From assembly GCF_006345805.1 (NCBI RefSeq), contig NC_043017.1, positions 8,184,001-8,248,000 of the forward strand: 64,000 nt of DNA. The letters run 5' to 3'. This stretch comes from Octopus sinensis. Taxonomy: Eukaryota. The notes under the pieces are model-generated. The model was not told the DNA's origin, ran no database searches, and was given only the letters and a program-made list of their open reading frames with translations. Positions 208 through 28,996 of this stretch are shown here, piece after piece (position 1 is the stretch's first letter; every line of letters begins with the position of its first letter). A program made the translations under genes and the position numbers.

Positions 208-348
208 CAGGGGGTATGCATCCAAAGGAAGAACTTTTGTTGAGAAATGTCGTTTCTTTGCATCCCGTCCAATTCGTTCAGCGACTTCTTGAGCCGTACC
301 AGTTTGACTGCCATAAAGAACACAGATTTGGTTCTCTTTTTCAATCAT
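208..348 (-). CDS. NDOR1: NADPH-dependent diflavin oxidoreductase 1, first coding exon (flavodoxin N-terminus); gene continues off the left edge
   Basis: Manual translation [47 protein letters not shown] (47 codons) matches the NDOR1/Tah18 N-terminus (human [31 protein letters not shown]...LDSYPV). Strong acceptor ttttttccatcag (AG 356-355) gives exon start 354 with 6 nt of UTR; phase-0 donor CTG|GTAAGA at 208/207. Confidence 0.94.
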
Positions 349-2086
349 GACAAACTGATGGAAAAAAATGAAGAAAATGGAGATAAAATTTAGATTTTAT
401 CGAAATTATCATATAATTAAAATTATCCTATAATGGTAAATATGATGTACTTTTTTCCCCAAAAAATGTTCCCAAAAGATATTTGATTATAAAAATATAA
501 TGGGATTTTTTAAATATCAAATGGCTATGGAGTCCCATAGAGTAAAATAGGGTTAAGATTACCAAAACATAATTTTGAATTTATATATATATTTCACATG
601 ATCAACCAGACTATCATGTGTTGTTATACATTGCTTATCTTAATGTGCTTTGCACTGTTTTAGCTTTCAAATAATATCCCCCAGCTGGCTGGGTGAGCAG
701 GCCAACATTATCCCAAATCAGAAGCCCATCACAAGGTTATGGTTAAGTGGACTGGAGCAATGTGAAATGAAATGTTTTGCTCAAAAGCACAATGCATTAC
801 TCAGTCCAGGAATCAAACCACAATTGCTAGATAGTGAGTGCAATAACCCTAACCACTAGGCCATGTACCTTTGCACACACACACACACACATAGATAGGT
901 GACACGTTGAGTATTTGAGCAAGACACTTCATTTCCTACTCCTCCAGTCAGCTCCTATGAAAATTATTACCAGCTGCATGCTAATACAACTCTCACTCAC
1001 TCTCTGAGTGTTACATCCTCAATGTGCCACAAGGAGTATCTATGCCTATACACAACTGCATAGGTACCTAAAACAACTATTTTCTTTGTATCGGTTGGTG
1101 CTGGTACCATGTGAAAAGTATTGGTGCTGGTGCCACATAAAAAGCACTTGTGTTGATACCACGTAAAAAGCAGCCAGTACACTTTGTAAGGTGACTGGTG
1201 TTAGGAAGGGCACTCAGCTGTAGAAATCATGCCAAAACAGACAATGGAGTCTGGAGCAAATTTCCGGTTTGCCAGCTCCTGTCAAACCATCCAACACTCT
1301 GCCAGCATGGAAAGTGGACGTTAAATGATGATGATGATGGCAGTACATGTTACCAAGTCATACCTCCAAATAAGTGATGTGTCTGTGTGTGTGTATGTAT
1401 GGATGCATACAATTATGTAAGCACGTATACTTGCATGCATGTTCATATATAAGTGGATGTGTATTTCAGAAGTATGTATGATATATATGTATTATATATA
1501 TATCATCATCATCATCGTTTAGCATCTGTTTTCCATGCTAGCATGGGTTGGACGGTTCTACTGGGGTCTGTGAAGCCAGAAGGCTTCATCAGGCCCAGTC
1601 AAATCTGGCAGTGTTTCTACGGCTGGATGCCCTTCCTAACGCCAACCATATATTATATATACATGCATATGTATATATGTGTTTGTACATTTATGTGTAC
1701 CCTTGTCTTGGCATCACATGATGGTTGTAAGCGAGTGTCACCATCATACATTTCCATTCTCCCGTGGAAAACATATTCAGTCATGAGGAAATATTACCTT
1801 GCTTTGAGACATTTGCAGGTTCTGCAACAGGACGGTCATCCAGTTAAAGGTCTGCCTTAACAAATTCTTTCTGACCATACAAAAATTCTCACGTTTGTGC
1901 TTACATCTGTCTTTACACTGGTCTAAAAACCAGTATTGTTTAATATCCTATAACTTAGTAGTTCAACAAATAAGACTGATAAAATAATTACCAGACTGAA
2001 ATAGGTACAGGGGTCAATAAAATTGGACAGGGCTTCAGCAATGATACAGTCCAATGACTAAAACCAATAAAAGAATAGTGTATATT

Positions 2087-2952
2087 TATGTGTGTGATGA
2101 ATAAACTGTCATCTAAATTACGCAAAAAAAAAAAAAAAACAATGGCATCTCATTTTAACAGATATATTTACCAAAATTACATAAAAATATCTCGGAATTC
2201 TAAACAGTGAATTTATTTAATAAAATCACCATTGGCTTCAACCACAGCCTCCAGACAGCTTCGGAATCTCTTGCAACTCTTCTGGATAGTTTCCTTGTTT
2301 AAGTTGGTGAATGCTGCCATAATCCTTGCCTTCTTTGGTGTTACAAGGAGTTTTGTTGGTCTCTTGCTCAACTGCACCCCACACATAATAATCAAGGGGG
2401 TTACAGTCTGGGAAGTTAGGTGGCCAGATGTTAGGGGTGATGTGGTTGCAGAAATTGACTGATAGCCATGACTAGGTTCTCCTGCTTGTGTGGCATGGTG
2501 CAGAGCTCTGTTGCCAGAACATAAGGTCTTCCAGCAGCCACCCTCTTGACCTAGAGCAGCACTACCTCCTCTTAGGCACTTGATGTAGGGCTCTGTATTG
2601 AGTCTGAGGCTGTGTAGGAAGATGAATGGAGGTATAACATCTCCATCACTAATTGTCATTCCAAACACCATGATGTTGACTGGATATTTGATTTTTATCA
2701 CTTTCAGTACATGTCCTCAGGTTGGCACCCAAACACTCTAAAATGTACCTATTGGAGCATCTGGCACGAATGCCAAGCAGTACAGCATGTCGTTTCCAAA
2801 TTTCTGGCAGAGTGAATTGCATCATGGTCCTCTTTTTCTCACAGATGGTGCCCAACTGACTCTACTATACTATGTAGTTGACAAAATCAAAAACTGTGTA
2901 TGTGTGAAATTAAAAATATAAGATGGCAACAATTTACCCATCACACCCTGTA
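2087..2952 (-). mobile_element. Internally deleted maT/DD37D Tc1-mariner transposon
   Basis: TIR tacagggtgtgatgggtaaattgttgccat at 2952-2923, degenerate partner at ~2087-2113. Relic WQQ(S)SAPCHT...WPPNFPDCNPLDYYVW has 37 residues between the second and third catalytic positions; C-terminus ...LEAVVEANGDFIK. Stops and frameshifts present. Confidence 0.9.
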
Positions 2953-3551
2953 GATAGAAAAATAGACAAATACGTATATTTTGGGTTCAGTGCCTTCTAC
3001 TATGGACCCTGGCTAACAGAAGTCTTGTGAGTGGCTCTGATAAGAAGAAACTGAAAGAAGCCTGTTGTATGTATATGCATATATGTGTGTGCACATGTGC
3101 ATAGGAGAGGGAGCTGTCATCTTGCCTTGGTTTTTGTGATAGTTATAAACAGGAATACCCATCATGCAAGCTGTGTCCATTTTCAATCTTTCATGAAAAC
3201 ATGTCTGGTGAAGGGAAAATATTCCCTTCCTTACAAACAGGTGAGGATTGGCAACAAGAGCATCTGGCTGTAGAAAAATCTGTCTCAGCAATTTCTGCCC
3301 AATTCATGTAAGCATGGAAAAGTGAATGTTAAAACAAAGACAATGATGGCAGATATATGTAAAAACATTGTCATAGAAATTATCTTCGTCTTTATCCTCT
3401 GGATTACTGAAGAGTTGCTTTTTAAGTGCTAAATTTCAATAGGATTAGAGACGGAAAAGGCATCCAAATTCAAAATAATACCTTAGTAATATGTATTTGT
3501 CTCACCCAGGGTAGCATGGAATAATGTACATAAAAACAAACATACATATAT

Positions 3552-4490
3552 ATTATTATTATTATTAGTTCATCTGTCATTGACAATGACCAACGACATC
3601 ATTTGGGAGAAGAAAACAGGGCACAGTGCACCTGGTTATGGCTGATCAATCTGAGGTGTACTTGGAAGGCTCCACCATAGGACACACACTGGTGGGCTGC
3701 AGGGAGTGAAGGGGTGAAGTTGGCTCTGGACTTGCACACCTCACATTTTCTTTGTACCCCAACAAGCCTGTCCTCATTGTAGGAGGTGGAACCTCTGTTG
3801 GTGTAGGTTTGTCAGGCAGGACAGTCTTGGGCTTGTATTTCCCAGATGTTGGGGTTGATCTCAAAGCTCTTCAATGAGGCTTTGAGTATATCTTTGAAGT
3901 ACATTTTCTGTTCACCTTGCATGCCTTTACCTTCCACCAGTTTGTTGTAAAACAATCTCCTGGGGAGTCATGCATCAGGCATTTGAACGAGGTGGCCTGC
4001 ACACTAAATTTGAGCTCTCTCCAGCCTCAGCAGTGTGTAAATGCTTGGCTGATAAGCTCAAGAGAGGACCTCTATGTCTGAGACCTTGTTTTGCCAGGTG
4101 ATTTTTGACAGCTTTCTCAAGCAATTTATGTGGAAGTGGTTTAGTTTTTTGGTGTGGTGTTCAGAAACTGTCCAAGTCCCACAGGTGTACAGTAGTGTAA
4201 GCAGTACAACTGCTTGGTGCATCTTCAGTTTAGTGACCAACCTAATACCTCACCTTTCCCACACTGATTCATATAGACTCGAATGCTGAGCTTCCCTTGG
4301 CAATGCATATATCAACTTCATCATTAAAGTTCACAGATCTGGAAAGTGTGCTGCCAAGGTAGGTGAATTTATCAACAACCTTCAGGGTTTTCCTTTTGCT
4401 TCCACATACAGCTTCTGCAGAGCAGGTTCATACACGGCATCTGTCTTCTGAGTACTGACTGTGAGGCAAAAGGTGGTGCAGGTGGTGGAA
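3552..4490 (-). mobile_element. 5'-truncated RTE-clade LINE (BovB-like), degenerate
   Basis: FGLTVSTQKT..., DKFTYLGSTLSR, TKLKMHQAVVLLTLLYTCGTWTV...KKLNHFHINCLRKL; (TAA)n tail at ~3552-3566. Confidence 0.9.
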
Positions 4491-5034
4491 AAGTACTGTA
4501 TGTATAAGTGTGGCTATGTGGTTAAGAAGCTTGCTTTCCAACCACTTGGTCTCTGATTCATTCAGTCTCAGTGCATTCTACAATAGCTCTAGGCCAACCA
4601 AAGCCCTGTGAAGGGATTTGGTAGACAGACACTGAAGTATATGTATGCATGTGTATGTTTGTGTACATGCATCTCCACTTCTACACATTGTGTAATGGTT
4701 GTAGATGAGTGTCACTGTTATACAAGCAGGGTTAGTCATTTTCAGTCTTCAAAGAAACGTGTCCAAGGAAATACCTTGCTTGGAAATGAGTAAGAGCAAG
4801 TAACCAGAAGGGCAGCCGGCTGCAGAAAATTTGCCTTGATAAATTCTGTCTGGCCCATGCAGCCAGAAAAACAATGATGGTGATGATGATGATATATTGT
4901 TTGTTTTCTGTGAAGTTATATATAAAAACAATTTAACATTAACATATTTATTCTTTCAAGCTGAATATTCAAATTCACCACCAGCCATTTTCTTATATAT
5001 ATATATAAGGAAATGTTAGTGCCAATATATCTCT

Positions 5035-5406
5035 TTTTCTCTTTTTACTTGTTTCAGTCATTTTGACTGCAGCCATGCTGGTGCACCGCCTTTAATCGGG
5101 CAACTCGACCCCAGGACTTATTATTTGTAAGCCCAGTACTTATTCTATCGGTCTCTTTTGCCGAACCGCTAAGTGACAGAGACATAAACACACCAGCATC
5201 GGTTGTCAAGCAATGCTAGGGGGACAAACACAGACACGCACATACATATATATACATATATACGACGGGCTTCTTTCAGTTTCCGTCTACCAAATCCACT
5301 TACAAGGCTTTGGTCGGCCCGAGGCTATAGTAGAAGACACTTGCCAAGGTGCCACGCAGTGGGACTGAACCCGGAACCATGTGGTTGGTAAACAAGCTAC
5401 TTACCA
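5035..5406 (-). mobile_element. Young tRNA-derived SINE, family 1
   Basis: tRNA-like head (ggttccgggttcagtccc), ggcaccttgg(g)caagtgtctt body, TA/TG spacer, tail gactgaaacaagtaaaa. Confidence 0.85.
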
Positions 5407-5694
5407 CTTTTTAAAAAGCTTTTACAAACATATTTCAGATGGAGTAGATTATGATGAATTTGGAATTTGACATGAAAAAATAATTTGTGTGGGGTCGGAT
5501 GATTCACGCACACCCACTTTCTTTCCACATACGTTTTGATGAGGCATGTGAATTCCCCACCCTTCCATCCAATGAAATTCTGAGGCAATCGTAATCTGCA
5601 CTGTTTGACGTGTATTTGTGGAAAATTTTATTTAAAAATATCCATTAATCAGAAAGTTATGAGGAAACAAAGTCGATGGAGGGATACACTTCTG

Positions 5695-6120
5695 CAGTTA
5701 TAGTGATCTCAAATTCCACCAAACAAGCCATCACTTGGTAATTGACTACGCCTTGGGAGAAACATAAAGAGGAAGCTTGCAAAATATCAATAGTTGATAG
5801 GGAAGTGCAGAAATTGGGGCTAAGTCACCTTGAAAGGAAACTGACGTGGACTGTCGAGGTTTTTTAGGGCGTTTCTTTAAGCAAAATCTGACTGGGCTTT
5901 AAATTACTGGTGCAGTAAAAAGGAGGGCTTTAACACCCATCACTGAAGCTTCAGAGAAGGGCATTAGGTTGCTTTGGATAAAGACAGAAGACCGGGGTTT
6001 GGTGTTCCTGGGACTTGATGAGCCCCGGCCGGGTGAACTGGGCAAGAGAATCTGATGCTGAAAGACCTGAACCACTTAGACTCCAGAAATATTTCTGATG
6101 ATGCATCTGAGGGCATCTAT
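5695..6120 (+). mobile_element. 3' end of a HERO-like non-LTR retrotransposon (restriction-like endonuclease domain plus 3'UTR)
   Basis: Relic VIVISNSTKQAITW*LTTPWE...KRKLAKYQ*LIGKCRNWG...DCRGFLGR...ITGAVKRRAL...EASEKGIRLLWIK resembles the PD..ELTVPWE..K..KY..EVGCRGF REL domain; following sequence resembles the HERO 3'UTR as recalled. Confidence 0.8.
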
Positions 6121-6446
6121 GAGATGTATCTTAAAACTATATATATTTATATAAGTCCAACATGTGATATATATCTATGCAGTATAAAATTACATATAAC
6201 AACAGCTACTGCTCTGCTCTGCCTTATCCTGTAGTATCAATAAATATCCATAGCATGTGAGAAAATGACCTCGTTGTCCCCCAAAGCACTTGTTGGAAAT
6301 CATCGTCGCTGAAATAACGAATAGTTTTCATGCTCAGTGACCACTGAGTAGATGTGAATTTAATTTACAATGATATATGAAGATAATGGTGAATGATGAC
6401 TAGGAAGATCGCTCAGGAACACAGACCTCTTAACGTTTCTACTTAC

Positions 6447-6700
6447 CGAAACAATATTATCGCCTCTTGAAAACAGCGGTGAATTCTTTCACAATATTGA
6501 TTATTTTAGAATACTAAAGTTGAACAAAACATACTTTTATTCAAATTACAAACAGTTTGGACACTAAATAGTATATAAACTAATACAATCAAACTTACTG
6601 TGATTTTTTCAAACAAAATTTAATTTTTTAAACTTATTAATTAAGTGCTCAGACTTCTTTTAATTCGGTAACTATTTTCAGTGAAGGACCGGTTTGTCCT
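6447..6700 (-). other. NDOR1: Putative non-coding first exon of NDOR1 (5' boundary unknown)
   Basis: Consensus donor TCG|GTAAGT on the minus strand at 6447/6446 in a CpG-containing region. The exon at 354 needs an upstream exon. An in-frame TGA upstream of the donor makes this exon UTR. Confidence 0.5.
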
Positions 6701-6950
6701 CAAAACGTGATATTTTACTGAGGGTTCAGTTAAAGCTAATAATTCCAGCGATTTTCTAAGAACTCGTTTATTTATAAAATATTAGTATGTATAATTTTTT
6801 CTGAAAGATTATTTTATTCGGCTGAACATTTGATTTTTTTAAATAGCAGTTTTAGTAAATTCACGGGAGAAGGAATGCAAATGTTGTTACGAAACGAAGT
6901 GTTCGTTATAGCTTTACTTTCGTTTGCTGAGTGAGCAGCGAGTGAAAGTG
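6450..6950. promoter_or_regulatory. Candidate bidirectional promoter between NDOR1 (minus) and TMEM203 (plus)
   Basis: TE-free stretch with retained CpGs, bracketed by divergent strong donors (minus 6447, plus 7318) and followed by a GAGA-rich tract at 6960-7150. Confidence 0.5.
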
Positions 6951-7318
6951 AGATCGGGGTAGGAGTGAGCAGCAGAGAGATATAGAGAGAGGAGGACATA
7001 GAGAGAGGGAGAGAGGGACAAAGAGAGATCGAGGGAGGGACGTACACAGAGAGAGGGAGTTACATAGATTCAGAGAAAGAGAGATCGGGAGAGAGAGACA
7101 TACGGAGACTTAGAGAGAGAGAGTGACATACCGAGAGAGAGAAAGACGGCTTGTGAGATTGACAGCTTCTCTTTCTCACTCACTCACATCGTCTCTACAT
7201 TTCTTATTAATTCATTACCAAAAAAAAGAAGAGGATAAAGAAGACCAACAGCTTTTAAGACCGAAATTTGATACAAAATTTCACAGAGAGGGATGCTGTC
7301 TTGTTAAACTGATCAAAG
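6920..7318 (+). other. TMEM203: Putative non-coding first exon of TMEM203 (5' boundary unknown)
   Basis: Donor AAG|GTATGT at 7318/7319; contains a short uORF ATG CTG TCT TGT TAA at 7293-7307; no other plus-strand coding gene recognised before 28589. Confidence 0.5.
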
Positions 7319-7949
7319 GTATGTCGGAATCAACCATCTCTTTCCCCCTTTTCTATATATATACTTATATGTATATATATATATATACATTTATATATTC
7401 ATATGTGTATTTGTATAGATCATCTTTGGTTTCAATCAACCCGTTTGGTAGTTTCTAACGATAAATCGGGGTTATTTTTTAATTAGATGCTTCACGATGG
7501 CAATAATAATAGTTAGAAGAAAATATTGCCATAGATGAAGTATGATAGAAAGTCCTTGCGAAGCTCGACCTACCGATATTATTAAAAGGAACACTATTAG
7601 CTATTAGTGGTGTCGACGGGTTAGTAGCCTTTTGTTAGTGTTTCTATGTGTTTATATAGAAGGACATTAGTATGCGAGTTGATATGTAATAACAGGAACA
7701 TGTCCGTATAGTAGTAGTAGTAGTAGTAGTAGTGATGGTGGCAGTAGCAGGATTTAGAAATACTATATATCACCAGTGATAGTGTCGTGGTGGTGGAGGC
7801 GAGATAGAGTGTAAAATACACTCATTATATCATATCTCCTCGGGTTTATTAAGACATTAATATATTTCCCCCATTTATTATGAACGTTCTGTTATATTGC
7901 TATGCATCTATGTGTGTTTGTCTTTATATTCCCGTACATTAATTAATGT

Positions 7950-7963
7950 GTACGTATATATAT

Positions 7964-8036
<73 letters not shown>

Positions 8037-8250
8037 CATACACACATATATATATACGCACACATATATATATACACACACACACACATATATATATATA
8101 CATACACACACATATATCTATACACACACACAAATATATATCTATACACACACACATATATATCTATACACACACATATATATATATATATACACACATA
8201 TATATATATATACACACACACAGACATATATACAGATACACATCGCATTA
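7950..8250. repeat. Compound (TA)n/(CA)n microsatellite
   Basis: Direct reading; source of several spurious YI/HT ORFs. Confidence 0.95.
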
Positions 8251-8972
8251 CGTATATTTAATTAATTTTGTATTACCTCGACTGTTTTTTTATTATACAC
8301 ACTATATATATATATCTATAGTGTATATGTCTATATATATATGAAGTGACGTTCACATGTCATGAAAGATCACTCAATATAATGAACTAGAGTTAAATAT
8401 AATTTATGTTACAATTCGGCGTTTATTCGTTTCCCCACCATCATCAAAAGGGTTTTGGTCGTCACGGTTAGGGGAGAGGAAACAGAATAAGCGCCATACA
8501 TAATCTGTGTGTATTTATAACCCACATGTGTGTATGCATATATGTTTATATATATGAAATCACATGCACGTATATACACATACATATATGGGTGCAATCG
8601 TGGCTGTGTGCCTAAGAAGTTTCCTTTGCAACCACGTGGATCGGTGTTCGATCCTACTGCGCGACATCTCTCGTTAGCGTCTTCAACTATAGCCTCGATT
8701 TGACAAACTACCTTGTGAGTGTAATTTAGTAGACGGAAATTGTACACACGCAAATACCTACATAAATGTATGTGTGTGTGTTTCTGCTACACCGGTCTCA
8801 AAACCGGTGTTTTTCATGTTACGTCCCTTTATGTCGTTTCACAGCTGTACGACAAATAGCTATCGTCAAAATGCGTACTAGGCGGAGTGAGAGCGATGTT
8901 ATCAACCTCCAGTTATTTGTCACAAGTCAATGGCCGAAATGTGTGTGTGTATGTATTGTTTCCACGAGTGTG

Positions 8973-9033
<61 letters not shown>

Positions 9034-9564
9034 GGTCAAGTTCCCTGAGACCCTTTTCAGGGTCTCCGAGGCATGTGGAAGGTAGAGGAAAGTACAGTTT
9101 TTTCAAACTAGGAAGCTGACTAGAATTCTAGTAATAGAGTGAATTTTACTAAACACACCCAGAGGACAGGGGTAGAGTGTTGTGTGTGTCTATATATAAT
9201 ATATATATATAGAGAGAGAGATGCACAGATATACCTGTGCATTCATGCATATCAACTCAAACATGCATGAGTTCATCTATTGAGGTATTTGTTTACATTA
9301 TAAGTCAAGAATTTTTACAACCGTTCTGTGACAGTCGTTATTTTTCATTGATATACATACATGTATATTCGTAGACTGCATCATCTCATTATCTGTTCAT
9401 GGGTGAGTTATAGACAAGTCGTTTGTTATGTCAACAATTACTATATATTGTGTGGTTAAACAAGTAACCAACTGTCTTTAGTTCAACGCTGGCTGAGAAG
9501 GTGAGAGGTCACTGAAACGTCTAGGGGTCCTACAAGGGAACTCAGATATTTCATGTTTCCTTTC

Positions 9565-9855
9565 ATCATCATCATCATCATCATCATCGTTTAACGTCCG
9601 TTCTCCATGCTAGCATGGGTTGGACGGTTCGACCGGGGATCTGGGAAGCCAGAAGGCTGCACCAGGCTCCAGTCTTATCTGGCAATGTTTCTACAGCTGG
9701 ATGCCCTTCCTAATGCCAACCACTCTGTGAGTGTAGTGGGTGCTTTTTACATGCCACCTGCACAGGTGCCAGGCGAGGCTGGCAACGGCCACGGTCGGAT
9801 TGGTGTATTTTATGTGCCACCGGCATCGGCCACGAGTCGGATAGTGCTTTTTATG
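9565..9855 (-). mobile_element. RTE-tailed SINE-like repeat, family 2
   Basis: 3' end ggttggcattaggaagggcatccagc...ggagaacggacgttaaac(gat)n; other copies at ~1040-1340, 1500-1650, 10172-10365, 14255-14485, 36730-37030, 37585-38045, 42000-42305. Confidence 0.85.
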
Positions 9856-19489: not shown

Positions 19490-19545
19490 ATCTATATGTG
19501 TATATATATCTTTGTGTTCGTGTGTGTGTGTGTATACATACACAC
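19135..19545. repeat. Compound TA/TG microsatellite with higher-order units
   Basis: Repeated tatgtgtgtatttatatata units. Confidence 0.95.
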
Positions 19546-21519
19546 CAGAGAACAGTTGGACTTCTCTCTTTGTGCAGTGTTTATTCTTGAGATTGTTTAT
19601 TTTTGTCTTCCTCAACTTCAGCAATGTCTTTTGTGGAGGAGGGATGAATGTTGGTGTGGTAGTAGTGGCTGAGACAAAGGTTCAAATTGAACCACCTGCT
19701 CTTTGGCAGGGCAGATTGTAGGGAGATGAATAAAATAAAATATTGTGTTAGTAACCAACCATCCCTCCTATTGTTGCTGTTTGTTGTTGTTTCCTTGCTT
19801 TCCCCTCCTTGTACATCCTCCCATATCTCTTCTTTTCTTTCCTTGCAGTCATTGCCCTACCATCCATCCATCCATTCCAAAAGTAGTAAACACATTTACC
19901 AGGAGAAATATATTTATATTATACTTCCAGTCACCTGCCACCCTACTCAGCATCTACCATCTTTCTGCTTTATCATCTTAGCCTTTGGCTAGAGTAATAC
20001 TTCATTATTATTATTATTCTGCTACGGTCGACTTTGCCTTTTATCAATAAAGTACCAGTGAAACACTGGGGGGGGGGGGGCAATGTAATCATCAAGTCCC
20101 CTCCCCACAAATTTGAGATCTTGTGCCTTCAGTTGATAAGATTATTATTATCATTATTATTATTATTCTGCCAAAGTCAACTTTGCCTTTCATCCTCTCG
20201 GGGTTGATAAATTAAGTACTGAGGTCAATGTAATTGCCTATCCCTCTCCCCCCAAATGTCAGGCCTTGTACTTTTAGTAGAAAGGATTATTATTATTATG
20301 ATGCATGTGGTCTTCCATCTTTATGTTCTGAGCTCAAATTTGCCTTTCATCCTTTCGGGGTCGATAAGATAAGCACCAGCCGAACACTGGGATTGATGTA
20401 ATTGATTTACTCCCTCCTCTGAAATTGGTTGCCCTGTACCCAGATTTAAAACCTTAATTAATGCATATGTTACATTCTGTTGGCTAGCATCATCGTCAAA
20501 CATCCACTTTTCTTTGTCAATCTCTTTTGCCAAACCACTAACTTATGGGGACATTACCAAACCAAATACCATTTGTCAAATAATGGTGAGAGGGGCAAAC
20601 ACAAAGGTGCGTGTGTACGTGCACACACACACACACACACCTCTTCCACACTGTTTCTGTCTGCCAAATGCACTTACCCCAAAGTGATGTACAGTGGGAC
20701 TGAACCCAAAACCACAAAACCATAGTTGCAAAGCAGGTTTCTTAACCATCTTTTTAGGGTTGATAAATGTAAGTCGATGTAATTGATTTGCCCCCTCCTC
20801 CAAAATTTCAGGCCTTGTGCCTTTGGCAGAAAGGGTTATTATTATTATTATTAATAATAATAATAATAAATTTGATTCCAAAAAAAGTAACAACTACTTG
20901 AATTTCTTCAATTTCTTTATTACTATGGCAACTATGTTTCTGCTGTCGCCATCTCTTGTGGTAATTATACATCCAAGTTTACAGAAATTACCAGTAACTG
21001 GGGTGTTTTTTTTTCTTCTTTTTTGCTTGTTTTAAACATTTTGTGGTCTTCGTTGTATGAGTCGTCATCATAGATAACTATTCTTGTACATCTTTTATTG
21101 TATGAGGTGTCCTCACTAATTCTTTTATATTTGGCTCATCTAAAGCCCTGATTTCCTGTCAGTCTGCCAGAGATCCCACAGCATCTTTGCATATGAGCAA
21201 TAATTGAATGACTGAGAACATTACATTAAGTTCTTGCCAACTTCCTTCATATTGAACTTGGCCATTTCCCAGGTGGTAACTGGTTTTTGTACTCCTCGTT
21301 ACTGTCTAGTACTGTGGACTGGCTACTAATTAGTATTATGCTTACATTACTAATTAGTATTGCGGTGTCGTAACTAACCCCTTTGCTACCAGAAAGCCAT
21401 CACTACTAGCTGGCCCTCAACTACCTGATATACTGTTTAATTACAGGTTGATAGTGTGATAAGAGTGTAGGAGTCTTCTGTTATTATGCCATTCACATCT
21501 TGGATCACACATGACCGAT

Positions 21520-21770
21520 TAGGTTGTCAGATGTTGTTACACATCATTGGTCACAATGCAGATTTGCATCGTTTTAGCCTTCAAATGATGCCACCCTGCT
21601 GGCTAGGCTAACAGGCCGACATTCCCCCACTAATCGAAAGCGGGGAACTGGAGCAATGTGAAATGAAGTGTTTTGCTCAAAAACACAATATGCCGCCCAC
21701 TCGGGGAATTGAACCTACAATCTGGCAATAGTGAGTGTAGCAGCCTAACCACTAGGCCATGCACCTTCAC
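21520..21770 (-). mobile_element. tRNA-derived SINE, family 4
   Basis: gtgaaggtgcatggcctagtggttagg head, ggttcaattccc B-box, ttgagcaaaacacttcatttc body; copies at ~650-870, 27710-27880, 39680-39990, 47830-48125. Confidence 0.75.
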
Positions 21771-22529
21771 ACTTGTTGGATACTTTATAAAAATAATAGA
21801 TCAGCCCATGCCAGTGCTTGACTGGTTCTTCATTTCATCAAATGCAGAAACATAAGTGAAGTTGACTTTAGCTGGTTTTGAACTCAGAATGGAAAGGCCT
21901 ATAAAACATACGTGTTAAAACTGCAGGTTTTAACATGTTAGCTGCCACATTTTACTGCTGGTGGTTCATTGCAAACTTCACACAACCATCATATGCACAA
22001 CCGGTGGTACATTTTTGTAATGTGAGAAAATATCTTATTTTGTATCTTTGTCATGGTTTCGAGGTTATTTAAATAACATAAATGCTAAATATTAAAATTT
22101 AATTATAAAATAGTGTAAAAATGCAAAAATAAAATTTCCTTGTAATTTAACAGTGTAACCAGAAAATATGTAGTATCACCAATAAGTTCCAGTAACAGGC
22201 CATGGCAGTTAATATATTGATGAATTTTTCTTGGTTTAGCCCTGTTGTTACCATATTTATGCTGAAATATACTCCCCTTCTTTCAATTAATTTTAAAAAT
22301 AAAAAAAAAATTAAAATTTTGCTGCTATTAAGCTGGGGTTTGAAATATAAACTAACAAAATTTTGTTGGATGGTTTTAATTTAGAGCACTTTAAGACTGG
22401 AAATTTCTATCATAAAATGAAGTACTGCTTCAGGTGGGTTGGTGTCAAAAGGGCCAAATAGTACTGTTGTTTTATTACTAATTAGTACCATGGTCTTGTT
22501 ACTGCTTAGTACTAGGGCCACATTACTAA

Positions 22530-22738
22530 TTAACCCTTTCGTGTTCAGATTCTCTGTCAAAGTATTCATGTCATTTTGGAGTAATCATGCATTATTTCAT
22601 AGCTTTGAGATTTTGATGATGTGATTGTTTATTTTTACAATGACACTATAAAGTAAAAGACCAGATCTAACCAGTTTGAAGATAAAACAAGTAGAATATT
22701 TTGGCCTGATATGACTGGTTTAAATGCTAAAGGATTAA
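22530..22738. mobile_element. piggyBac-type MITE
   Basis: TTAA-ccctttcgtgttc...aaatgctaaagga-TTAA. Confidence 0.75.
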
Positions 22739-23239
22739 TGCTATTGCTTTGATATTGTTTTTAATAATTATTGATGTCAGTTTGTTTGACTAAACCCTTC
22801 AAGGCAGTGCCCCAGCATGGCCACAGTCCAATGACTAAAACAAATAAAAGACAAAAAATAAATTTTAAAAATGTTTTGTTTTGTGTAACAGGAACGTCCA
22901 GTCTTCAAAACACAGAAATCCAAAAGTTGTTTTAAAAATAAATCAGAAATAGAATTTTAAAATGTAAACAAATTACAGCAATGTACATAATTTGATTATT
23001 TGAAATCATTTGTTTATTCATTCCAGTAACCCAAGGAAACCAGATTTAGATTTTTGTATTCCCTTTTATTGCTGGTCCAGTTTTAATGATGCAGATTTCA
23101 TCAATTCTTACTCTTTCATCATCATCATCATCTTCATTTTAACATTCACTTTTTTCATGCTTGCATGGGTTTGACAGAATTTGTTGAACCCTGTTTTTCT
23201 ATGGCCAGGTGCCCTTCCTGTCGAAGACATCACTTCTCA

Positions 23240-23535
23240 TATTCACCCCTTCCAAGTTCTTCCAAAGTCTTCCTTTAACCAACCCCAAATAAAGAAGTCA
23301 CCGGGTGTTAAGTTGGGACTTCTGGCTGGCCACTCATGCAGACAACAATGACCCATCCATCTCCTAGGGAAGCAGGTTTTCAGTCATGTGTGAATGACAT
23401 GAACAATGCAATTAAAGAATAAATTCTCATACCTCAAAAAAACAAACACAAAAACAAAATTTGAGAAAAAAATTACAATTAATAAATAATTTCTAAGTAT
23501 TTTAAAATTGGGAGTTACTTTTCAATCACCCTGTA
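23240..23535 (-). mobile_element. Tc1/mariner remnant
   Basis: WPARSP(N)L.PGDFFIWGWLK relic; TIR tacagggtgattgaaaagt at ~23533-23515. Confidence 0.7.
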
Positions 23536-24018
23536 TATGCAATTCACTCATAAACATTCATACACTCCCACCCTGTCCTTTCTCTATCTCTTTCTTTCCT
23601 CTTTCCTTCTCTCTCTTCTCTATCACTCTCCTCTCTCTCTCTCTCTCTCTCTTGTGTGTTGTCTCCCCAGCCACAGTTGTCCTTCATGACCAGTCACAAG
23701 GAATCGATGTTTGTGATGTAATGTAAGAAATCAATACGTGTGTATTTGTATATTTTGTTGCTATATCCTGTTTGTTATTTACTGGTTTCAGTTATTGAAC
23801 TGTGGCCATGCTGGGACATCACTTTCTTTTGTTTCATTGATGATATCAACCTCGATGCTTATTTTATCTTTATTTTCAAATGGCTAAATTATGGGCCATG
23901 AAGTGGCCCAACATTGCTGCAGTCCTCTGGCTTGCCAGCCCTTGTCAAGCTGTCAAACCCATGCCATCATGGAAAACAGACATTAAATGAGGATGATTAT
24001 ATATATATATATATATTC

Positions 24019-24437
24019 ATATAGGTGCAGGAGTGGCTGTGTGGTAAGTAGCTTGCTTACCAACCACATGGTTCCGGGTTCAGTCCCACTGCATGGCACC
24101 TTGGGCAAGTGTCTTCTACTATAGCCTCGGGCCGACCAAAGCCTTGTGAGTAGAAACTGAAAGAAGCCTGTCGTATATATGCATATATATGCATATATAT
24201 GCATATATATGCGTGTGTGTTTGTGTGTCTGTGTTTGTCCCCCTAGCATTGCTTGACAACCGATGCTGGTGTGTTTATGTCCCCATCACTTAGCAGTTCG
24301 GCAAAAGAGCCCGATAGAATAAGTACTGGGCTTACGAAGAATAAGTCCCGGGGTCAAGTTGCTCGACTAAAGGCGGTACTCCAGCATGGCTGCAGTCAAA
24401 TGACTGAAACAAGTAAAAGAGTAAAGAGTAAAAGAGT
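24019..24437 (+). mobile_element. Full-length tRNA-derived SINE, family 1
   Basis: aggtgcaggagtggctgtgtggtaag...gactgaaacaagtaaaagagtaaagag. Confidence 0.9.
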
Positions 24438-26202
24438 ATATCCAAAATCTATGTAAATACCCATTTCTTTGACTGCTTCCTTCTGAAGATAGGCCTTTGC
24501 ATCTGTGATATAAAGGGTTTTCAAACTTTCTGTATTGTTAGAAGCTTTCTTATTTCTCATTTCATTCATTTTTTCTACTATTATACTACAATGCTTCTAG
24601 TGAACTACAACACACTTCATATATAGACACAAGCATGGCTTTGTGATTAAGAAGCTTGCTTACCAACCATGTGGTTTTGGGTTCAGTCCCACTATATAGC
24701 ACTTTGAGCAAGTGTCTTCTACTAGAGCCCCCCATGCTAGCCAAAGCCTTTTGAGTGGATTCTGTGGAATGGAAACTGAAAGAAGCCTATCACGTGATAG
24801 TTTTAAATGAGCATCATTACCATGCAGGTGATAGTGTATATTTCCAGTATTCCTTGGGAAAACATAGCCTGACCATCAGAAATATTACCTTGCTTGGCAA
24901 CCTATAAGGATTTTCTATGGTAGGATGTTCTCTCTGTAGTAGGATGTAACAGAGAGAGCATCCTGTCATAGATAATCTGCCTCAACAAATTTCATTTGAC
25001 TCATAGAAGCTTGGAAAAATGGACTTTAAATTATATGATAATAAGACTTTCTTGTCAGTACATGATCTTGTTGTTATTGATATATTAAATATTCTTGTTT
25101 GGCACGTAAATTATGACGTGTTTGGTGTGCTGGTGCCTTCTGGGTAAATATGCTGTTTACTTTTTAATTTAGAAATCTAAGCTCTTATCTTTTATCTGTT
25201 TCAGTCATTAGAGTGTGGCCATGTTGGGGCAGTGCCTTGAAGAGTTTTTTTTTTTTGTTGAACTTACATTTTAAAACCTGGTATTTATTCTATTGGTCTC
25301 TTTTGCTGAACTGCTAAGTTAGAGGGATGTAAACACACCAACACCAATTGTCAGGTGGGTGGGGGGTCCATGCACATAGATATTTATAGAATGGGCTTCT
25401 TTCAGTTTCCAAATCTACTCACAAAGCCTTGGTCAGCCTGAGACTGCCACGCAGTGGAACTGAACCTGGAACCATGTGGTTGGGAAGTAAGCTTTTTACC
25501 ACACAGTTATGCCTGTGCCTTAGTTCAAATTCACTCTATATTGGATACAAATGAGAGTAGGTTTGAGCAAGGAACTAAATAAGACTATATGAGGTAACAT
25601 AGCAAAGGCCATAACTGGAAGGCCTTTCATTATATAGGATTACTTTGTTGGTGCTGACCTGGGGCTAAATACCAACAAACATGGTAATGTATTGCACATG
25701 ACTTTGATCAGCCCAGGGCTATAGTAGAAGACAGGCCCATGGTGTCATATAGTGAGGCTGAACCTAAAACTAAGTAGTTTAGAAGCAAAATTCTTAACCA
25801 CTGTTATATTATCTGTTCTGTGTTATCTTCACAAGTTAATTTATCTGTCACTTAGTGCTAGCAAGATAATTTACAATACTAAAGTCCAACATAACAAGTT
25901 GTCCCACCTTAGTATGATGTTTGTAGCCAGAATTAACCCTATATATATATATATATATTTCACTTTCCTTCCGTTAAGTGTAATGTTATTTCTCCTTGGA
26001 AACATCTTTTCTGTGGCTATACTAGTAACGGAGCTATTTTTAGCACTAGAGTTATCCACATAGTGGTAACTCTCTTATAATTTATGTATAAATTTGTATT
26101 ATCTCCCTAGTTTTATGTGCTAAGCCACTTGGTGTTAAATTGATGGTGTTATTAAATTAATATCAAATTTTTCACCCTCATTTATAAATATATATATATA
26201 TA

Positions 26203-26608
26203 CTCTTTACTCTTTTACTTGTTTCAGTCATTTGACTGCGGCCATGCTGGAGCACCGCCTTTAAACGAGCAACTCGACCCCGGAACTTATTCTATTGTAA
26301 ACCCAGTACTTATTCTATCGGTCTCTTTTGCCGAACCGCTAAGTGACGGGGACGCAAACACACCAGCATCGGTTGTCAAGCAATGCTATGGGGACAAACA
26401 CAGACACACAAACACACACACGCATACATACATATATATATATACATATATACGACGGGCTTCTTTCAGTTTCCGTCTACCAAATCCACTCACAAGGCTT
26501 TGGTCGGCCCGAGGCTATAGTAGAAGACACTTGCCCAAGATGCCACGCAGTGGGACTGAACCCGGAACCATGTGGTTGGTAGACAGGCTACTTACCACAC
26601 AGCCACTC
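26203..26608 (-). mobile_element. Near full-length tRNA-derived SINE, family 1
   Basis: Reverse complement of the 24019 copy. Confidence 0.9.
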
Positions 26609-28110
26609 ATAAATACAAAGATAGAGGAAGCTGGCTTTAATTGCAAATTACAACATTTGTTTCTTTGCCAAACACCAGCTTTAAGCTGCTGAGTTTTTAT
26701 TTATATGTCATTCCATAAAATTATTCTATATCTGAATGAAAATTTAGCAACTTAAAGCTGGTGCCTGGTGTAGAAACAAACGTAATTTGCAAATAAATTT
26801 TTATATTTATACCATAGCAGAGTTCCACATGTTTATCCAACCTTGGAAAAAATCTTGCTGCAAGATGGCATGTGGTAACTAGTATAGGAACTTTCAAACG
26901 CCTGTTGAGGTTGTTACCCAAATTATATTGAATACATATAGTAAGAGGAGGGATATAATATCCAGGCGGATACCGAATTTTTCTGTGTAAAATGCAGAGG
27001 CTGGTTCCTTCAGATGGTGTGTTTTTGGTAAACATGTGTTGGACAATTATTATGAATAAACTAACTGGAAATAAACAAAGTTCAAATTCTTCATTCTTGT
27101 TATTATTGATCTCAAGTATAATCAGCCGAAATTGCAAAGATAATCTGGTACTTGACTGAGGACAGAAAACTTTGAATGACCCGTCTTTGTTTTCTTTGTA
27201 TCATCTAACTGGATGTTTCGTTGTCCCATTTTTGTATCACCTAAGCTGTCCAGATGTTTTGCATTCTTGTCTCATTTTAATTTTATGTGTGTACACACAC
27301 ACACACACACACATTGGTAAGTGGTTGTAGTTTTGTTAGTGGGGCTCTTGTTTTTCTGCCACAAACTGATGACTGATGTTAATAATGTCAAAATATCATA
27401 AACAAACATCTTCACTGTCATTGCTTTAACATTTTTTTCTCCCTTTCCACTGTTAGTATGAGTTGAACAGGTTTGTATGCAAATTTACACTCCCTGTTCA
27501 TCCTATGTGATTTCCCATCATCCCCTTTTTATCTCACTCTGCCTCATCCCATCCCCTGCCGTTTTTCATCTTAACCTTATTTCCTCCTGTCTCATCCCAC
27601 CTCTTCTGTTACTCAGCAAACATTGCTTGCTTCACCCCATGTGTTGAGCCTCATCTAGTCTCTACTTGTTAGACCACATTGCCCTTTCCCGGATTCTCTG
27701 ACGTGTATAATCCTCCCTGTATAAGATGCTGGTACCGTGCAGGATTACTTATTCTTACCAGTTGAGTGGACATGAAATGAAGTGTTTCGCTCAAGAACAT
27801 CACACATCGCCTGATCCAGGAATTGAAACCACAACCTTATTATCATGAGTCCAATACCCTAACCACTAAGTCATGCACCTCCTACTCATATTGTCTCATC
27901 ACATCCTCTCCCTATCCATCCTGTGTCATCTCTCACCATATTCTGTTCCCTTTCATCTCATCCTTCCTTGTCCCATCCTTTGTCCCCCTTGCACTTCATC
28001 CCATCTCCTCTCAACTCTGAAGCCCTGATCTCTTTACTCTTTCCCTCTTGGGCTTCACTACCATTTGTCACTCAGCAAACCTTGTCCCCTTCCCATCATG
28101 TGTTCCTGTG

Positions 28111-28588
28111 CTAACATTTACTCTCTTTTTCTCTATTCCATAGGTGCACCTAGAATGTTGTCATTGGCTCAGGGATATGGAATCTACCTGTTCTGATCTA
28201 ATGTCTACGTGGCACACCAACGTCAGTTCCACTCATGTCACCAGGACTTCTAAACTTAACAATAAGGATTACTTCAGGAAAAGAACCCACATGAATCACA
28301 ACCAAAACAACAACAACAACAAAAACAATCTTTAAAAAAAATCACAGAAAAAGAAAAAAAAATAATAAAACAACTAGGATCTACAATTTAAGCCGATCAG
28401 AACCATACTACCACCAACACTTTCGTGTCGGGGGTGGTAGCAGCCCGTTGCCTACATGCAGATTTCATCGTTAACGAGACAACCGCCTGCCGTTCAGCCA
28501 AGCTTGCTGTATTGCAGCTGTCGGTACCGTGAATGTCTACTTCAGCACCATCACCACCACCACCACCACCACCACTACCACTACCATC
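28111..28588 (+). other. TMEM203: Branch point, acceptor and 5'UTR part of the TMEM203 coding exon
   Basis: tgCTAACat branch point at 28111-28115, polypyrimidine tract ttactctctttttctctattcca, AG at 28142-28143; exon would start at 28144. Confidence 0.6.
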
Positions 28589-28996
28589 ATGCTCTTCACT
28601 CTACGAGAACTTGTACAATGGATTGGTCTGACGGCCTTTGAGATCTGGATGCACCTGATAGCGGTGTTTGTCTTCTCTATAATGGCTGCACTGAAGTACG
28701 AACGCGTGATGGATACGTCGTGGTGGATGGTGTTTGCACCCATGTTCGCCATCGACGCCATCGATGCTTACTTCATCATCATCGTGTTCATCCGAACTAT
28801 AAAAGAACTGGACCTGCTACGTCCAGCCGGCATCCGACTGGTCTCATCCTTGCTAGTTGTCATGCTGATCTTTATATTCAAAACACTACTGTGCCAGAAA
28901 CTAAGCCATGAAAAGATGATCTCGTGTTCTGAGATAATGATTCCCTTGTTTATACTGTTACAGATTATCATGTTTCGGGCCTGCCAAGTACACTAG
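28589..28996 (+). CDS. TMEM203: Transmembrane protein 203 (135 aa), uninterrupted CDS
   Basis: MLFTLRELVQWIGLTAFEIWMHL...LLCQKL...PLFILLQIIMFRACQVH is colinear with human TMEM203 (MLFSLRELVQWLG...LLCQKL...PLFILLQLLMIRACRVN). First in-frame ATG is 28589; in-frame TAA at 28472. Confidence 0.96.
   Translation: MLFTLRELVQWIGLTAFEIWMHLIAVFVFSIMAALKYERVMDTSWWMVFAPMFAIDAIDAYFIIIVFIRTIKELDLLRPAGIRLVSSLLVVMLIFIFKTLLCQKLSHEKMISCSEIMIPLFILLQIIMFRACQVH

What the first reader, a model, noticed from the sequence alone, without database searches (positions are those of the whole stretch)
208..28996. NDOR1-TMEM203 head-to-head pair, as in human, apparently kept although the start codons are 28 kb apart
Seen: NDOR1 first coding exon (minus) and TMEM203 CDS (plus), each behind a strong acceptor and so needing an upstream UTR exon; the two best divergent donors (minus 6447, plus 7318) bracket a TE-free, CpG-retaining island. 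Known: human NDOR1 and TMEM203 are divergent neighbours at 9q34.3 with very close 5' ends. Inference: a bidirectional gene pair conserved across the protostome-deuterostome split, with the shared promoter intact while both 5'UTR introns (~6 kb and ~21 kb) filled with TEs. It would link cytosolic Fe-S electron supply (NDOR1) and an ER membrane Ca2+/STING regulator (TMEM203). I cannot tell whether this conservation has been reported.
Basis: partly seen in the sequence, partly recalled or inferred. Interest (0 to 1): 0.85.

Follow-up and report, generated by a model that had tools for sequence, protein, structure and literature searches.

The report
Ancient NDOR1–TMEM203 head-to-head gene pair
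An octopus keeps the same back-to-back arrangement of two housekeeping genes (NDOR1 and TMEM203) that is found in mouse, amphioxus and an acorn worm, so the pairing is very old, but whether the two octopus genes still share one promoter across 28 kb could not be tested here.

Summary
Both genes are real. The NDOR1 first coding exon is at 348..208 (minus) and an intronless TMEM203 CDS is at 28589..28996 (plus).

The head-to-head pairing is not chance. I found the same divergent arrangement in amphioxus (about 285 bp apart), in Saccoglossus (7.9 kb, one inserted gene) and on an unnamed, probably lophotrochozoan, contig (3.8 kb). It is published for mouse. It is absent within ±10 kb in a nemertean, in termite-type insects and on some unnamed contigs.

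The shared-promoter part is plausible but unproven.
- **For:** The longest stretch in the first 30 kb with no second copy in the window (5412-8570) holds the only CpG-retaining island that is not a repeat copy (o/e about 1.0 at 6447-8570, against 0.22-0.27 in the flanks).
- **For:** A splice acceptor just upstream of the NDOR1 ATG recurs in other species, and the amphioxus gene model requires an intron there.
- **Against:** Donors 6447 and 7318 rank only about 15th on their strands across the interval.
- **Against:** A deeply conserved CpG-retaining block lies 40-185 nt upstream of the TMEM203 ATG and could be its own promoter.
- **Missing:** No transcript data were available.

This is a new example of a known class, the conserved ancestral divergent gene pair.

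The parts
208..348 (-). NDOR1 first coding exon: 47 codons, the start of the FMN-binding flavodoxin domain. The donor GTAAG begins at 207. The rest of the gene lies off the left end of the window.
   Evidence: Translation. Pfam Flavodoxin_1. Best PDB hit is human NDOR1 4H2D, E=1.5e-10. 63-66% identical to the equivalent exon in amphioxus and Saccoglossus.
349..375 (-). Six transcribed bases (TTTGTC) ahead of the ATG, preceded by a polypyrimidine tract and an AG acceptor (tcttcatttttttccatcag|TTTGTC ATG).
   Evidence: PWM 8.49, 0.047 expected per 60 nt. An equivalent acceptor lies 4 nt before the ATG in another cephalopod (L013). Saccoglossus has one 33 nt before the ATG, PWM 9.56. L008 has a weak one 2 nt before. 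The amphioxus gene model requires an intron here.
376..6446 (-). Putative NDOR1 5'UTR intron (inferred). CpG-depleted, with SINE-like and other repeated copies.
   Evidence: CpG o/e is 0.22 for 349-5411. Repeated copies are shown. The splice junction itself was not observed.
5412..8570 (.). Longest stretch of the first 30 kb without a second copy in the window. It holds the CpG-retaining island (about 6250-8570), a GA-rich tract at 6960-7160 and a TA/CA microsatellite at 7950-8230. This is the candidate promoter region.
   Evidence: Self-BLAST. CpG o/e 0.95-1.05. No Pfam hit in six of its ORFs. No ETS, YY1, NRF1 or SP1 consensus site, only three TGACGT half-sites.
6447..6447 (-). Candidate donor for an NDOR1 non-coding first exon (TCG|GTAAGT). 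The coordinate is the last exonic base.
   Evidence: PWM 8.85. It is the best minus-strand donor within 5412-9600 but ranks about 16th in 349-28588.
7318..7318 (+). Candidate donor for a plus-strand non-coding first exon (AAG|GTATGT). The coordinate is the last exonic base.
   Evidence: PWM 8.81. It is the best plus-strand donor within 5412-8570. Donors at 9402 and 9500 score higher. It ranks 15th in 349-28588.
8570..8780 (+). Young SINE copy with a tRNA-like head. It accounts for part of the CpG signal at 8.5-9.0 kb.
   Evidence: Ten further copies in the window at 70-75% identity. Sequence read.
27881..28143 (+). CT-rich tract with no CpG at all, ending in the acceptor ttctctattccatag|GTGC.
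   Evidence: 0 CpG in 263 nt at 46% G+C. Acceptor PWM 9.54, the best within 1.6 kb upstream of TMEM203.
28144..28588 (+). TMEM203 upstream region, either 5'UTR or 5'UTR plus proximal promoter. It carries 7 upstream ATGs.
   Evidence: Weakly alignable to another cephalopod contig (L005) back to about 28189, z=2.8. Upstream ATG count 7 against 7.9 expected.
28405..28549 (+). Non-coding block conserved in three cephalopods. CpG o/e is 0.89. It contains two conserved upstream ATGs (28456 and 28533).
   Evidence: Local alignment z=21 against Argonauta and z=14 against L005, with 0 of 200 shuffles reaching the score. CpG count.
28589..28996 (+). TMEM203 coding sequence: 135 codons plus stop, no intron.
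   Evidence: ORF. Pfam PF10269. 124 homologues, most of those named being TMEM203. Identical to a UniRef/EukProt entry.

Best explanation
NDOR1 and TMEM203 form an ancestral bilaterian divergent (5'-5') gene pair that this octopod has kept. In chordates the two 5' ends are a few hundred bases apart. Here the two start codons are 28.2 kb apart because non-coding DNA between them has filled with SINEs, other repeats and microsatellites.

NDOR1 has an old intron just upstream of its start codon, so its transcription start lies further upstream. The most likely place is the repeat-free, CpG-retaining segment at about 5.4-8.6 kb, spliced for example from 6447 to 354.

TMEM203 is probably also transcribed from that island through a long 5'UTR intron ending at 28143. 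In that case one bidirectional promoter would still serve both genes.

What is shown and what is inferred:
- **Shown:** the identity of both genes, the orientation, the conservation of the pairing, the CpG and repeat landscape, and the recurring NDOR1 acceptor.
- **Inferred:** the positions of both transcription starts, both splice junctions, and any co-regulation.

My separate estimates: ancient linkage 0.95; an NDOR1 upstream non-coding exon 0.8; the NDOR1 start inside the island 0.6; TMEM203 sharing that promoter 0.4.
For: **Gene identity**
-.

**Conservation of the divergent pair**
- Amphioxus L006, Saccoglossus L007, the unnamed contig L008 with a colinear NDOR1 exon series, and mouse (PMC4440627).

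**NDOR1 5' intron**
- Acceptors lie 2-33 nt before the ATG in the window, L013, L008 and Saccoglossus.
- The annotated amphioxus CDS starts 1.1 kb upstream of the conserved Met exon, 285 bp from TMEM203.
- No CpG island lies next to the octopus ATG exon (o/e 0.06-0.5 at 1-5000).

**The island**
- Within 349-28588 this is the only CpG-retaining stretch that is not a repeat copy.
- Internal control: the putative first coding exon of the neighbouring ABHD14-like gene (46.6-46.9 kb) also lies in a CpG island, at 45.75-47.75 kb.

**TMEM203 5'UTR intron**
- The best acceptor is at 28144, preceded by 263 nt of CT-rich sequence without any CpG.
- Strong acceptors lie 0.1-0.7 kb before the ATG in Saccoglossus (12.05), Lineus (11.06), L009 (12.65) and L008 (9.95).
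- In L008 and Saccoglossus the CpG-rich part of the intergenic region lies toward NDOR1, not against the TMEM203 ATG.
- In Saccoglossus the best minus donor (3035) and the best plus donor (3231) of the whole interval lie 196 bp apart around an ETS site.
Against: - No transcript, CAGE or chromatin data could be reached, so every splice junction is predicted.
- Donors 6447 and 7318 are ordinary. About 15 equal or better sites exist per strand in the interval.
- The island has none of the ETS, YY1, NRF1 or SP1 motifs seen in the amphioxus, Saccoglossus and L008 intergenic regions.
- A 145-nt CpG-retaining block directly upstream of the TMEM203 ATG is conserved in three cephalopods. It could be a local promoter.
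- Upstream ATGs are not depleted in 28144-28588.
- In amphioxus TMEM203 has no room for a long 5'UTR intron, and from general knowledge the vertebrate gene has none.
- The 28144 acceptor could not be shown to be conserved in Argonauta. That region is not alignable (z=-0.2) and is replaced there by microsatellites.
- NDOR1 was not found within 10 kb upstream of Argonauta TMEM203, so the octopod arrangement is seen in one genome only.
Confidence: 0.55

Rival explanations
1. The pair is ancestral, but in the octopus the promoters have separated. NDOR1 starts in the 5.4-8.6 kb island. TMEM203 starts from its own small proximal promoter at about 28.3-28.45 kb, at the conserved block, and the 28144 'acceptor' is a chance match.
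For: - The block 28405-28549 is the only non-coding sequence near either gene that aligns across three cephalopods (z=21 and z=14). It retains CpG (o/e 0.89).
- Conservation ends abruptly upstream of the block in Argonauta.
- An acceptor as good as 28144 is expected 0.31 times per 800 nt by chance.
- Seven upstream ATGs in 28144-28588 equal the chance expectation.
- Amphioxus TMEM203 must start close to its ATG; from general knowledge, so does the vertebrate gene.
Against: - The block contains two upstream ATGs conserved in all three species. That fits transcribed 5'UTR better than promoter.
- The 263 nt upstream of 28144 have no CpG at all and 28144-28404 has o/e 0.38, unlike the other gene starts in this window.
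- Strong upstream acceptors recur in several invertebrate TMEM203 loci.
Confidence: 0.28
2. The shared promoter has stayed next to TMEM203, as in amphioxus. NDOR1's non-coding first exon lies on the minus strand near 27.6-28.3 kb (for example donor 27759), and a single NDOR1 5'UTR intron of about 27.4 kb took up all the inserted DNA. The 5.4-8.6 kb island would then be an intronic element, an alternative promoter or an unannotated transcript.
For: - In amphioxus NDOR1 exon 1 lies 285 bp from the TMEM203 ATG, followed by a 1.1-kb intron before the conserved Met exon. Expansion of that one intron is the most economical route.
- Minus-strand donors at 27759 (9.03), 27601 (8.8) and 27937 (8.7) are as good as 6447.
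Against: - No CpG island lies at 27.0-28.4 kb. The stretch 27881-28143 has zero CpG.
- The only large CpG-retaining unique segment is 20 kb away.
- In L008 and Saccoglossus the CpG-rich part of the intergenic region lies toward NDOR1.
Confidence: 0.1
3. The adjacency in the octopus is a coincidence of gene order and says nothing about ancestry.
For: - Linkage is absent within ±10 kb in Lineus, Zootermopsis, an insect-like JGI contig and two unnamed ENA lineages.
- It could not be seen in Argonauta.
Against: - The same two orthologues are in the same divergent orientation in mouse, amphioxus, Saccoglossus, L008 and this octopod.
- The chance of immediate divergent adjacency of two given genes is of order 1e-5 per genome.
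Confidence: 0.01

Closest known systems
Mouse and human NDOR1-TMEM203 head-to-head pair
   Same: The same two orthologues lie in divergent 5'-5' orientation. [quoted passage not shown]
   Different: In mammals the 5' ends nearly touch, and from general knowledge TMEM203 is a single-exon gene. Here the start codons are 28.2 kb apart, NDOR1 clearly has a 5'UTR intron, and TMEM203 may have one.
Conserved ancestral microsyntenic pairs (CAMPs) of Irimia et al. 2012, for example HSPE1-HSPD1
   Same: These are unrelated neighbouring genes kept together across metazoan phyla. They are enriched for 5'-5' orientation and are explained by shared cis-regulation or bidirectional promoters (PMC3514665).
   Different: I found no text naming NDOR1-TMEM203 as such a pair. 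The CAMP supplementary lists are not held, so prior listing cannot be excluded. Short intergenic distance, a signature of the co-regulated class, is not met at the CDS level here.
Metazoan microsyntenies retained in coleoid cephalopods (Schmidbaur et al. 2022)
   Same: That work describes ancient blocks surviving the large cephalopod genome reorganisation, with enlarged non-coding spacing (PMC9023564).
   Different: Those blocks were defined with at least 3 genes. This is a two-gene pair and is not named in the held supplements.

Membership tests
NDOR1 (NADPH-dependent diflavin oxidoreductase 1; yeast Tah18) | An N-terminal FMN-binding flavodoxin domain that begins within about 10 residues of the start Met, with no membrane anchor. 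| tested here: met
   Pfam Flavodoxin_1 covers residues 10-45, matching profile positions 1-36. The alignment to human NDOR1 4H2D starts at residue 9.
NDOR1 (NADPH-dependent diflavin oxidoreductase 1; yeast Tah18) | Closer to NDOR1 than to the paralogous diflavin reductases (POR, NOS). | tested here: met
   NDOR1 scores 43.8 bits (E=1.5e-10). The best POR scores 23.9 bits and NOS 16.4 bits.
NDOR1 (NADPH-dependent diflavin oxidoreductase 1; yeast Tah18) | C-terminal FAD-binding and NADPH-binding domains. | not testable with these tools
   Only the first coding exon is in the window. The syntenic genes in amphioxus and Saccoglossus do carry FAD_binding_1 and NAD_binding_1.
TMEM203 | A protein of about 135 aa that matches the TMEM203 / PF10269 family over its full length. 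| tested here: met
   135 aa. PF10269 at 34.3 bits against a cut-off of 23.1. 100% coverage and 44-48% identity to named vertebrate TMEM203. 24 invariant columns in a 16-species alignment.
Conserved ancestral microsyntenic pair (Irimia et al. 2012) | Orthologues are adjacent in several distantly related metazoan lineages. | tested here: met
   Octopod (window), amphioxus, Saccoglossus, unnamed contig L008 and mouse. Lost in Lineus and insects.
Conserved ancestral microsyntenic pair (Irimia et al. 2012) | Conserved relative orientation (5'-5'). | tested here: met
   The genes are divergent in every linked case.
Bidirectional-promoter gene pair (Adachi and Lieber sense: opposite-strand transcription starts less than 1 kb apart) | Transcription start sites of the two genes lie within about 1 kb on opposite strands. 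| not testable with these tools
   No transcript or CAGE data are available. The candidate donors 6447(-) and 7318(+) are 871 bp apart but are unremarkable PWM matches.
Bidirectional-promoter gene pair (Adachi and Lieber sense: opposite-strand transcription starts less than 1 kb apart) | A CpG-rich, repeat-free shared promoter region between the genes. | tested here: met
   5412-8570 has no second copy in the window. CpG o/e is 0.95-1.05 at 6447-8570 against 0.22-0.27 in the flanks.
Bidirectional-promoter gene pair (Adachi and Lieber sense: opposite-strand transcription starts less than 1 kb apart) | Typical shared-promoter motifs (ETS/GABP, YY1, NRF1, SP1). | tested here: not met
   None is present in 5412-8570. 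ETS sites are present in the amphioxus, Saccoglossus and L008 intergenic regions. Whether these vertebrate motifs define cephalopod promoters is unknown.
Bidirectional-promoter gene pair (Adachi and Lieber sense: opposite-strand transcription starts less than 1 kb apart) | Co-expression of the two genes. | not tested

The most novel reading that the evidence does not exclude
A single bidirectional promoter has been held together since the bilaterian ancestor while the coding exons of both genes were pushed 28 kb apart by repeat-filled 5'UTR introns. Selection would then act on the shared transcription start region itself, tying supply of the cytosolic Fe-S assembly reductase (NDOR1) to an ER calcium/STING regulator (TMEM203). 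CDS-based measures would also underestimate how many ancient bidirectional promoters survive in large invertebrate genomes.
Probability: 0.35. Interest if true: 0.45.

Novelty: new member of a known kind. Interest (0 to 1): 0.3.

Why it matters
Deeply conserved divergent pairs are the best natural evidence that promoter sharing constrains gene order. This pair links two genes with no known functional connection. It was kept from at least the protostome-deuterostome ancestor in several lineages and broken in others. In insects, for example, TMEM203 sits 30 nt behind Rpp20.

If the octopus still uses one promoter across 28 kb, the constrained unit is the promoter rather than the intergenic distance. 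That would matter for how microsynteny screens are designed in large, repeat-rich genomes.

As it stands, this is an ordinary and credible addition to a catalogue of several hundred such pairs, not a new mechanism.

Tried and rejected
- **Exact look-up of the window's TMEM203:** no contig on record. An identical protein exists only in UniRef/EukProt, without a contig.
- **Search with the 47-aa NDOR1 exon:** it returned only exon-sized ORF fragments and no full-length cephalopod NDOR1. Argonauta NDOR1 therefore could not be located.
- **Argonauta ±10 kb:** no NDOR1 exon. Only SINEs, the TMEM203 CDS and the downstream ABHD14-like exons align.
- **My eyeballed 'GGATATGGA' match** near a strong Argonauta acceptor: not significant (z=-0.2) and dropped.
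- **Logan contig L005 (another cephalopod):** colinear with the window only back to about 28181-28189, short of 28144. It cannot tell splicing from a local start.
- **Logan contig L004 (termite):** fully colinear with the genome and uninformative.
- **L013 (another cephalopod, NDOR1 exon 1):** only the exon aligns to the window. No non-coding homology to the island.
- **SINE orientation bias** as a proxy for transcribed strand: no usable signal.
- **Pfam on 10 ORFs** from the interval and the island: nothing. My impression of mariner-like and LINE-like fragments is therefore from memory only.
- **Rfam and tRNA scans** of the whole window: nothing.
- **Saccoglossus Rad51-like gene:** no counterpart in the window.
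- **Cluster look-up** to name the unnamed contigs: no names returned.
- **Literature:** no paper names the pair beyond the mouse knockout paper.

Full report
**What is in the window**

The minus strand at 348..208 reads [47 protein letters not shown] and is followed by GTAAG. It matches Pfam Flavodoxin_1 from profile position 1. Its best solved-structure match is the FMN domain of human NDOR1 (4H2D, E=1.5e-10), about 20 bits above any cytochrome P450 reductase. This is the first coding exon of NDOR1. The rest of the gene lies beyond the left edge of the window.

The plus strand at 28589..28996 is an uninterrupted 135-codon ORF. It matches PF10269. It is 93% identical to an Argonauta hians protein and 44-48% identical over its full length to proteins named TMEM203 in vertebrates.

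An identical 135-aa sequence exists in UniRef/EukProt. The source is therefore an octopod already in public protein sets. I infer Octopus bimaculoides, but did not show it.

The two start codons face away from each other and are 28.2 kb apart.

**The 28 kb between the genes**

One third of 349-28588 has other copies inside the window. These include a roughly 150-bp SINE-like family that is also abundant in Argonauta and a SINE with a tRNA-like head. Microsatellites are frequent.

CpG is strongly depleted overall (window o/e 0.36). By segment:

| Segment | CpG o/e |
|---|---|
| 349-5411 | 0.22 |
| 5412-6446 | 0.49 |
| 6447-7318 | 0.95 |
| 7319-8570 | 1.05 |
| 8781-27880 | 0.27 |

The stretch 5412-8570 is also the longest part of the first 30 kb without a second copy in the window. 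Part of the CpG signal at 8.5-9.0 kb comes from a young SINE copy at 8570-8780.

Ten ORFs from the interval gave no Pfam match. Rfam and tRNA scans were empty. I found no sign of another gene, but this is weak negative evidence.

As an internal control, the putative first coding exon of the next gene lies inside another CpG island at 45.75-47.75 kb. That gene is an ABHD14-like hydrolase on the minus strand, and the exon is at 46.6-46.9 kb.

**Splice signals**

I scored sites with a generic position-weight matrix.

| Site | Score | Context |
|---|---|---|
| NDOR1 acceptor, first exon base 354 | 8.49 | 6 nt before the ATG; 0.05 such sites expected per 60 nt |
| TMEM203 acceptor, first exon base 28144 | 9.54 | best within 1.6 kb upstream; 0.31 such sites expected per 800 nt |
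| Donor 6447 (minus) | 8.85 | about 16th on its strand in 349-28588 |
| Donor 7318 (plus) | 8.81 | 15th on its strand in 349-28588 |
| Known NDOR1 exon-1 donor (208) | 9.03 | for comparison |

The two candidate donors are the top-scoring sites for their strands only inside 5412-8570. On the plus strand, 9402 and 9500 score higher just outside it. 'The two best donors' is therefore not confirmed. Their only distinction is that they flank the island.

**Is the pairing ancient?**

I fetched ±10 kb around TMEM203 in other genomes. I checked for NDOR1 through called genes, through tblastn with exon-1 peptides, and through tblastn with all amphioxus NDOR1 exon fragments.

| Lineage | Result |
|---|---|
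| Amphioxus (L006) | A 616-aa Flavodoxin_1 / FAD_binding_1 / NAD_binding_1 gene on the opposite strand. Its annotated CDS starts 285 bp from the TMEM203 ATG. |
| Saccoglossus (L007) | A 598-aa diflavin reductase, divergent, 7.9 kb away, with one intronless Rad51-like gene between. |
| Unnamed ENA contig (L008) | A colinear series of NDOR1 exons (6293 down to 1740, minus strand), divergent from TMEM203 and 3.8 kb away. |
| Lineus longissimus | Not linked within 10 kb. |
| Zootermopsis and an insect-like JGI contig | Not linked. TMEM203 follows Rpp20 on the same strand. |
| Two unnamed ENA lineages | Not linked within 10 kb. |
| Argonauta hians | The 10 kb upstream are empty, so linkage could not be tested. 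|

The TMEM203 of L008 is closest to a group that includes the nemertean sequence. Identity is 63-70% to that group, against 52-57% to the deuterostome and 55% to the insect proteins. I therefore treat L008 as probably lophotrochozoan.

Immediate divergent adjacency of two given genes has a chance probability of order 1e-5 per genome. The linkage is therefore ancestral to bilaterians, with several later losses.

**Is the promoter still shared? The NDOR1 side**

The evidence here is reasonably good.
- The annotated amphioxus CDS begins 1.1 kb upstream of the conserved Met exon. An intron must therefore lie just upstream of that Met.
- Acceptors lie 4 nt (another cephalopod, L013), 6 nt (window), 2 nt (L008, weak) and 33 nt (Saccoglossus, strong) before the ATG.
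- In L013 a CpG cluster with two CCAAT boxes, a GC box and a TGACGTAG site lies about 0.65-0.85 kb upstream of the exon.
- In the window the sequence next to the exon is AT-rich and CpG-poor. The first CpG-retaining stretch upstream that is not a repeat copy is the island.

An NDOR1 non-coding first exon in 5.4-8.6 kb is the most likely arrangement.

**Is the promoter still shared? The TMEM203 side**

The picture here is mixed.

In favour of a distal start:
- The 263 nt before 28144 are CT-rich and contain no CpG at all.
- Strong acceptors lie 0.1-0.7 kb before the ATG in Saccoglossus, Lineus, L009 and L008.
- In L008 and Saccoglossus the CpG-rich part of the intergenic region lies toward NDOR1.
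- In Saccoglossus the best minus donor and the best plus donor of the whole interval lie 196 bp apart around an ETS site.

Against a distal start:
- The block 28405-28549 aligns strongly across three cephalopods (z=21 and z=14) and keeps its CpGs (o/e 0.89). It may be a proximal promoter. However, its two conserved upstream ATGs suggest transcribed 5'UTR.
- Upstream of that block, the window and Argonauta do not align (z=-0.2). Argonauta has about 0.8 kb of (CCACTA)n there. The acceptor's conservation could therefore not be tested.
- Upstream ATGs in 28144-28588 are at chance frequency.
- Amphioxus TMEM203 starts right next to NDOR1 with no room for a long 5'UTR intron.
- The island carries none of the ETS, YY1, NRF1 or SP1 motifs present in the other species' intergenic regions.

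A third arrangement is also possible. As in amphioxus, the shared promoter may have stayed beside TMEM203, and NDOR1's one 5' intron may have grown to about 27 kb. Minus-strand donors at 27601-27937 are as good as 6447. No CpG island supports this option.

**Comparison with what is known**

Conserved ancestral microsyntenic pairs are a described class. They are enriched in 5'-5' orientation and are explained by shared cis-regulation or bidirectional promoters (Irimia et al. 2012, PMC3514665). Retention of metazoan microsyntenies in cephalopods is also described (PMC9023564).

Apart from the mouse knockout paper, no held text mentions NDOR1-TMEM203 as a conserved pair. The Irimia supplementary lists are not held, so earlier listing cannot be excluded.

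**Verdict**

The genes, the orientation, the acceptors and the island hold. The 'best donors' claim does not.
Ancient conservation is supported. An intact shared promoter with two long 5'UTR introns is plausible but untested, at about 0.4 for both genes together.
- This is a new member of a known kind, of modest interest.
- The decisive test is to map existing octopus transcript data to this window.

Noticed in passing
window 40728-40958, 41573-41818, 43665-43826 (minus); putative first coding exon 46624-46944 (minus): An ABHD14-like alpha/beta-hydrolase gene lies downstream of TMEM203 in convergent orientation. The same neighbour follows TMEM203 in Argonauta hians, with exons 78-83% identical at protein level. 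Its putative N-terminal exon, which has a transmembrane-like stretch, lies inside a CpG island at 45.75-47.75 kb.
   Followed up: partly
window 28405-28549; L001 9462-9700; L005 about 247-376: A 145-nt non-coding block just upstream of the TMEM203 ATG is conserved in three cephalopods (z=21, 14 and 8). It retains CpG and contains two conserved upstream ATGs (CCTACATGC and GTGAATGTC). The second opens an out-of-frame upstream ORF that overlaps the main start, which may mean translational control.
   Followed up: partly
L003 8311-10411 (Zootermopsis); L010 8827-10411 (insect-like JGI contig): In termite-type insects the TMEM203 ATG lies 30 nt after the end of the Rpp20 (POP7) CDS on the same strand, with CSTF1 upstream. 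JGI even names some TMEM203 proteins 'RPP20'. This looks like a dicistronic or tightly tandem arrangement that replaced the NDOR1 partnership.
   Followed up: no
L007 3558-4631 (Saccoglossus): An intronless 357-aa Rad51-family gene lies between NDOR1 and TMEM203 on the TMEM203 strand, inside the CpG-rich part of the intergenic region. It may be a retrogene that landed in the shared promoter or in a TMEM203 5'UTR intron. It has no counterpart in the octopus window.
   Followed up: partly
L001 8100-9475 and 9570-10000 (Argonauta hians): More than 1.5 kb of microsatellite, (CATCAG/CATCAC)n, (CCACTA)n and CAC/CAT runs, surrounds the conserved block upstream of TMEM203. The octopus has only a short ACC run there.
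   Followed up: no
L006 13685-20930 (amphioxus): A large gene with a eukaryotic RNA-dependent RNA polymerase domain (PF05183) lies directly downstream of amphioxus TMEM203. The amphioxus TMEM203 CDS also carries an intron after codon 36 that the octopus gene lacks.
   Followed up: no
window 6860-7160: Just right of the AT-rich core of the island there is a pair of inverted GAAACGAA / TTCGTTT motifs (6890-6930). They are followed by a 200-nt GA-rich tract interspersed with CpGs. A mirror-image CT-rich tract without CpG precedes the 28144 acceptor (27881-28143).
   Followed up: no
window 58750-62250 and 30750-31250: Two further CpG-retaining stretches (o/e about 1.0-1.6) lie in the window, and no gene was identified near either. 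The one at 59-62 kb is as large as the island studied here and is partly microsatellite.
   Followed up: no
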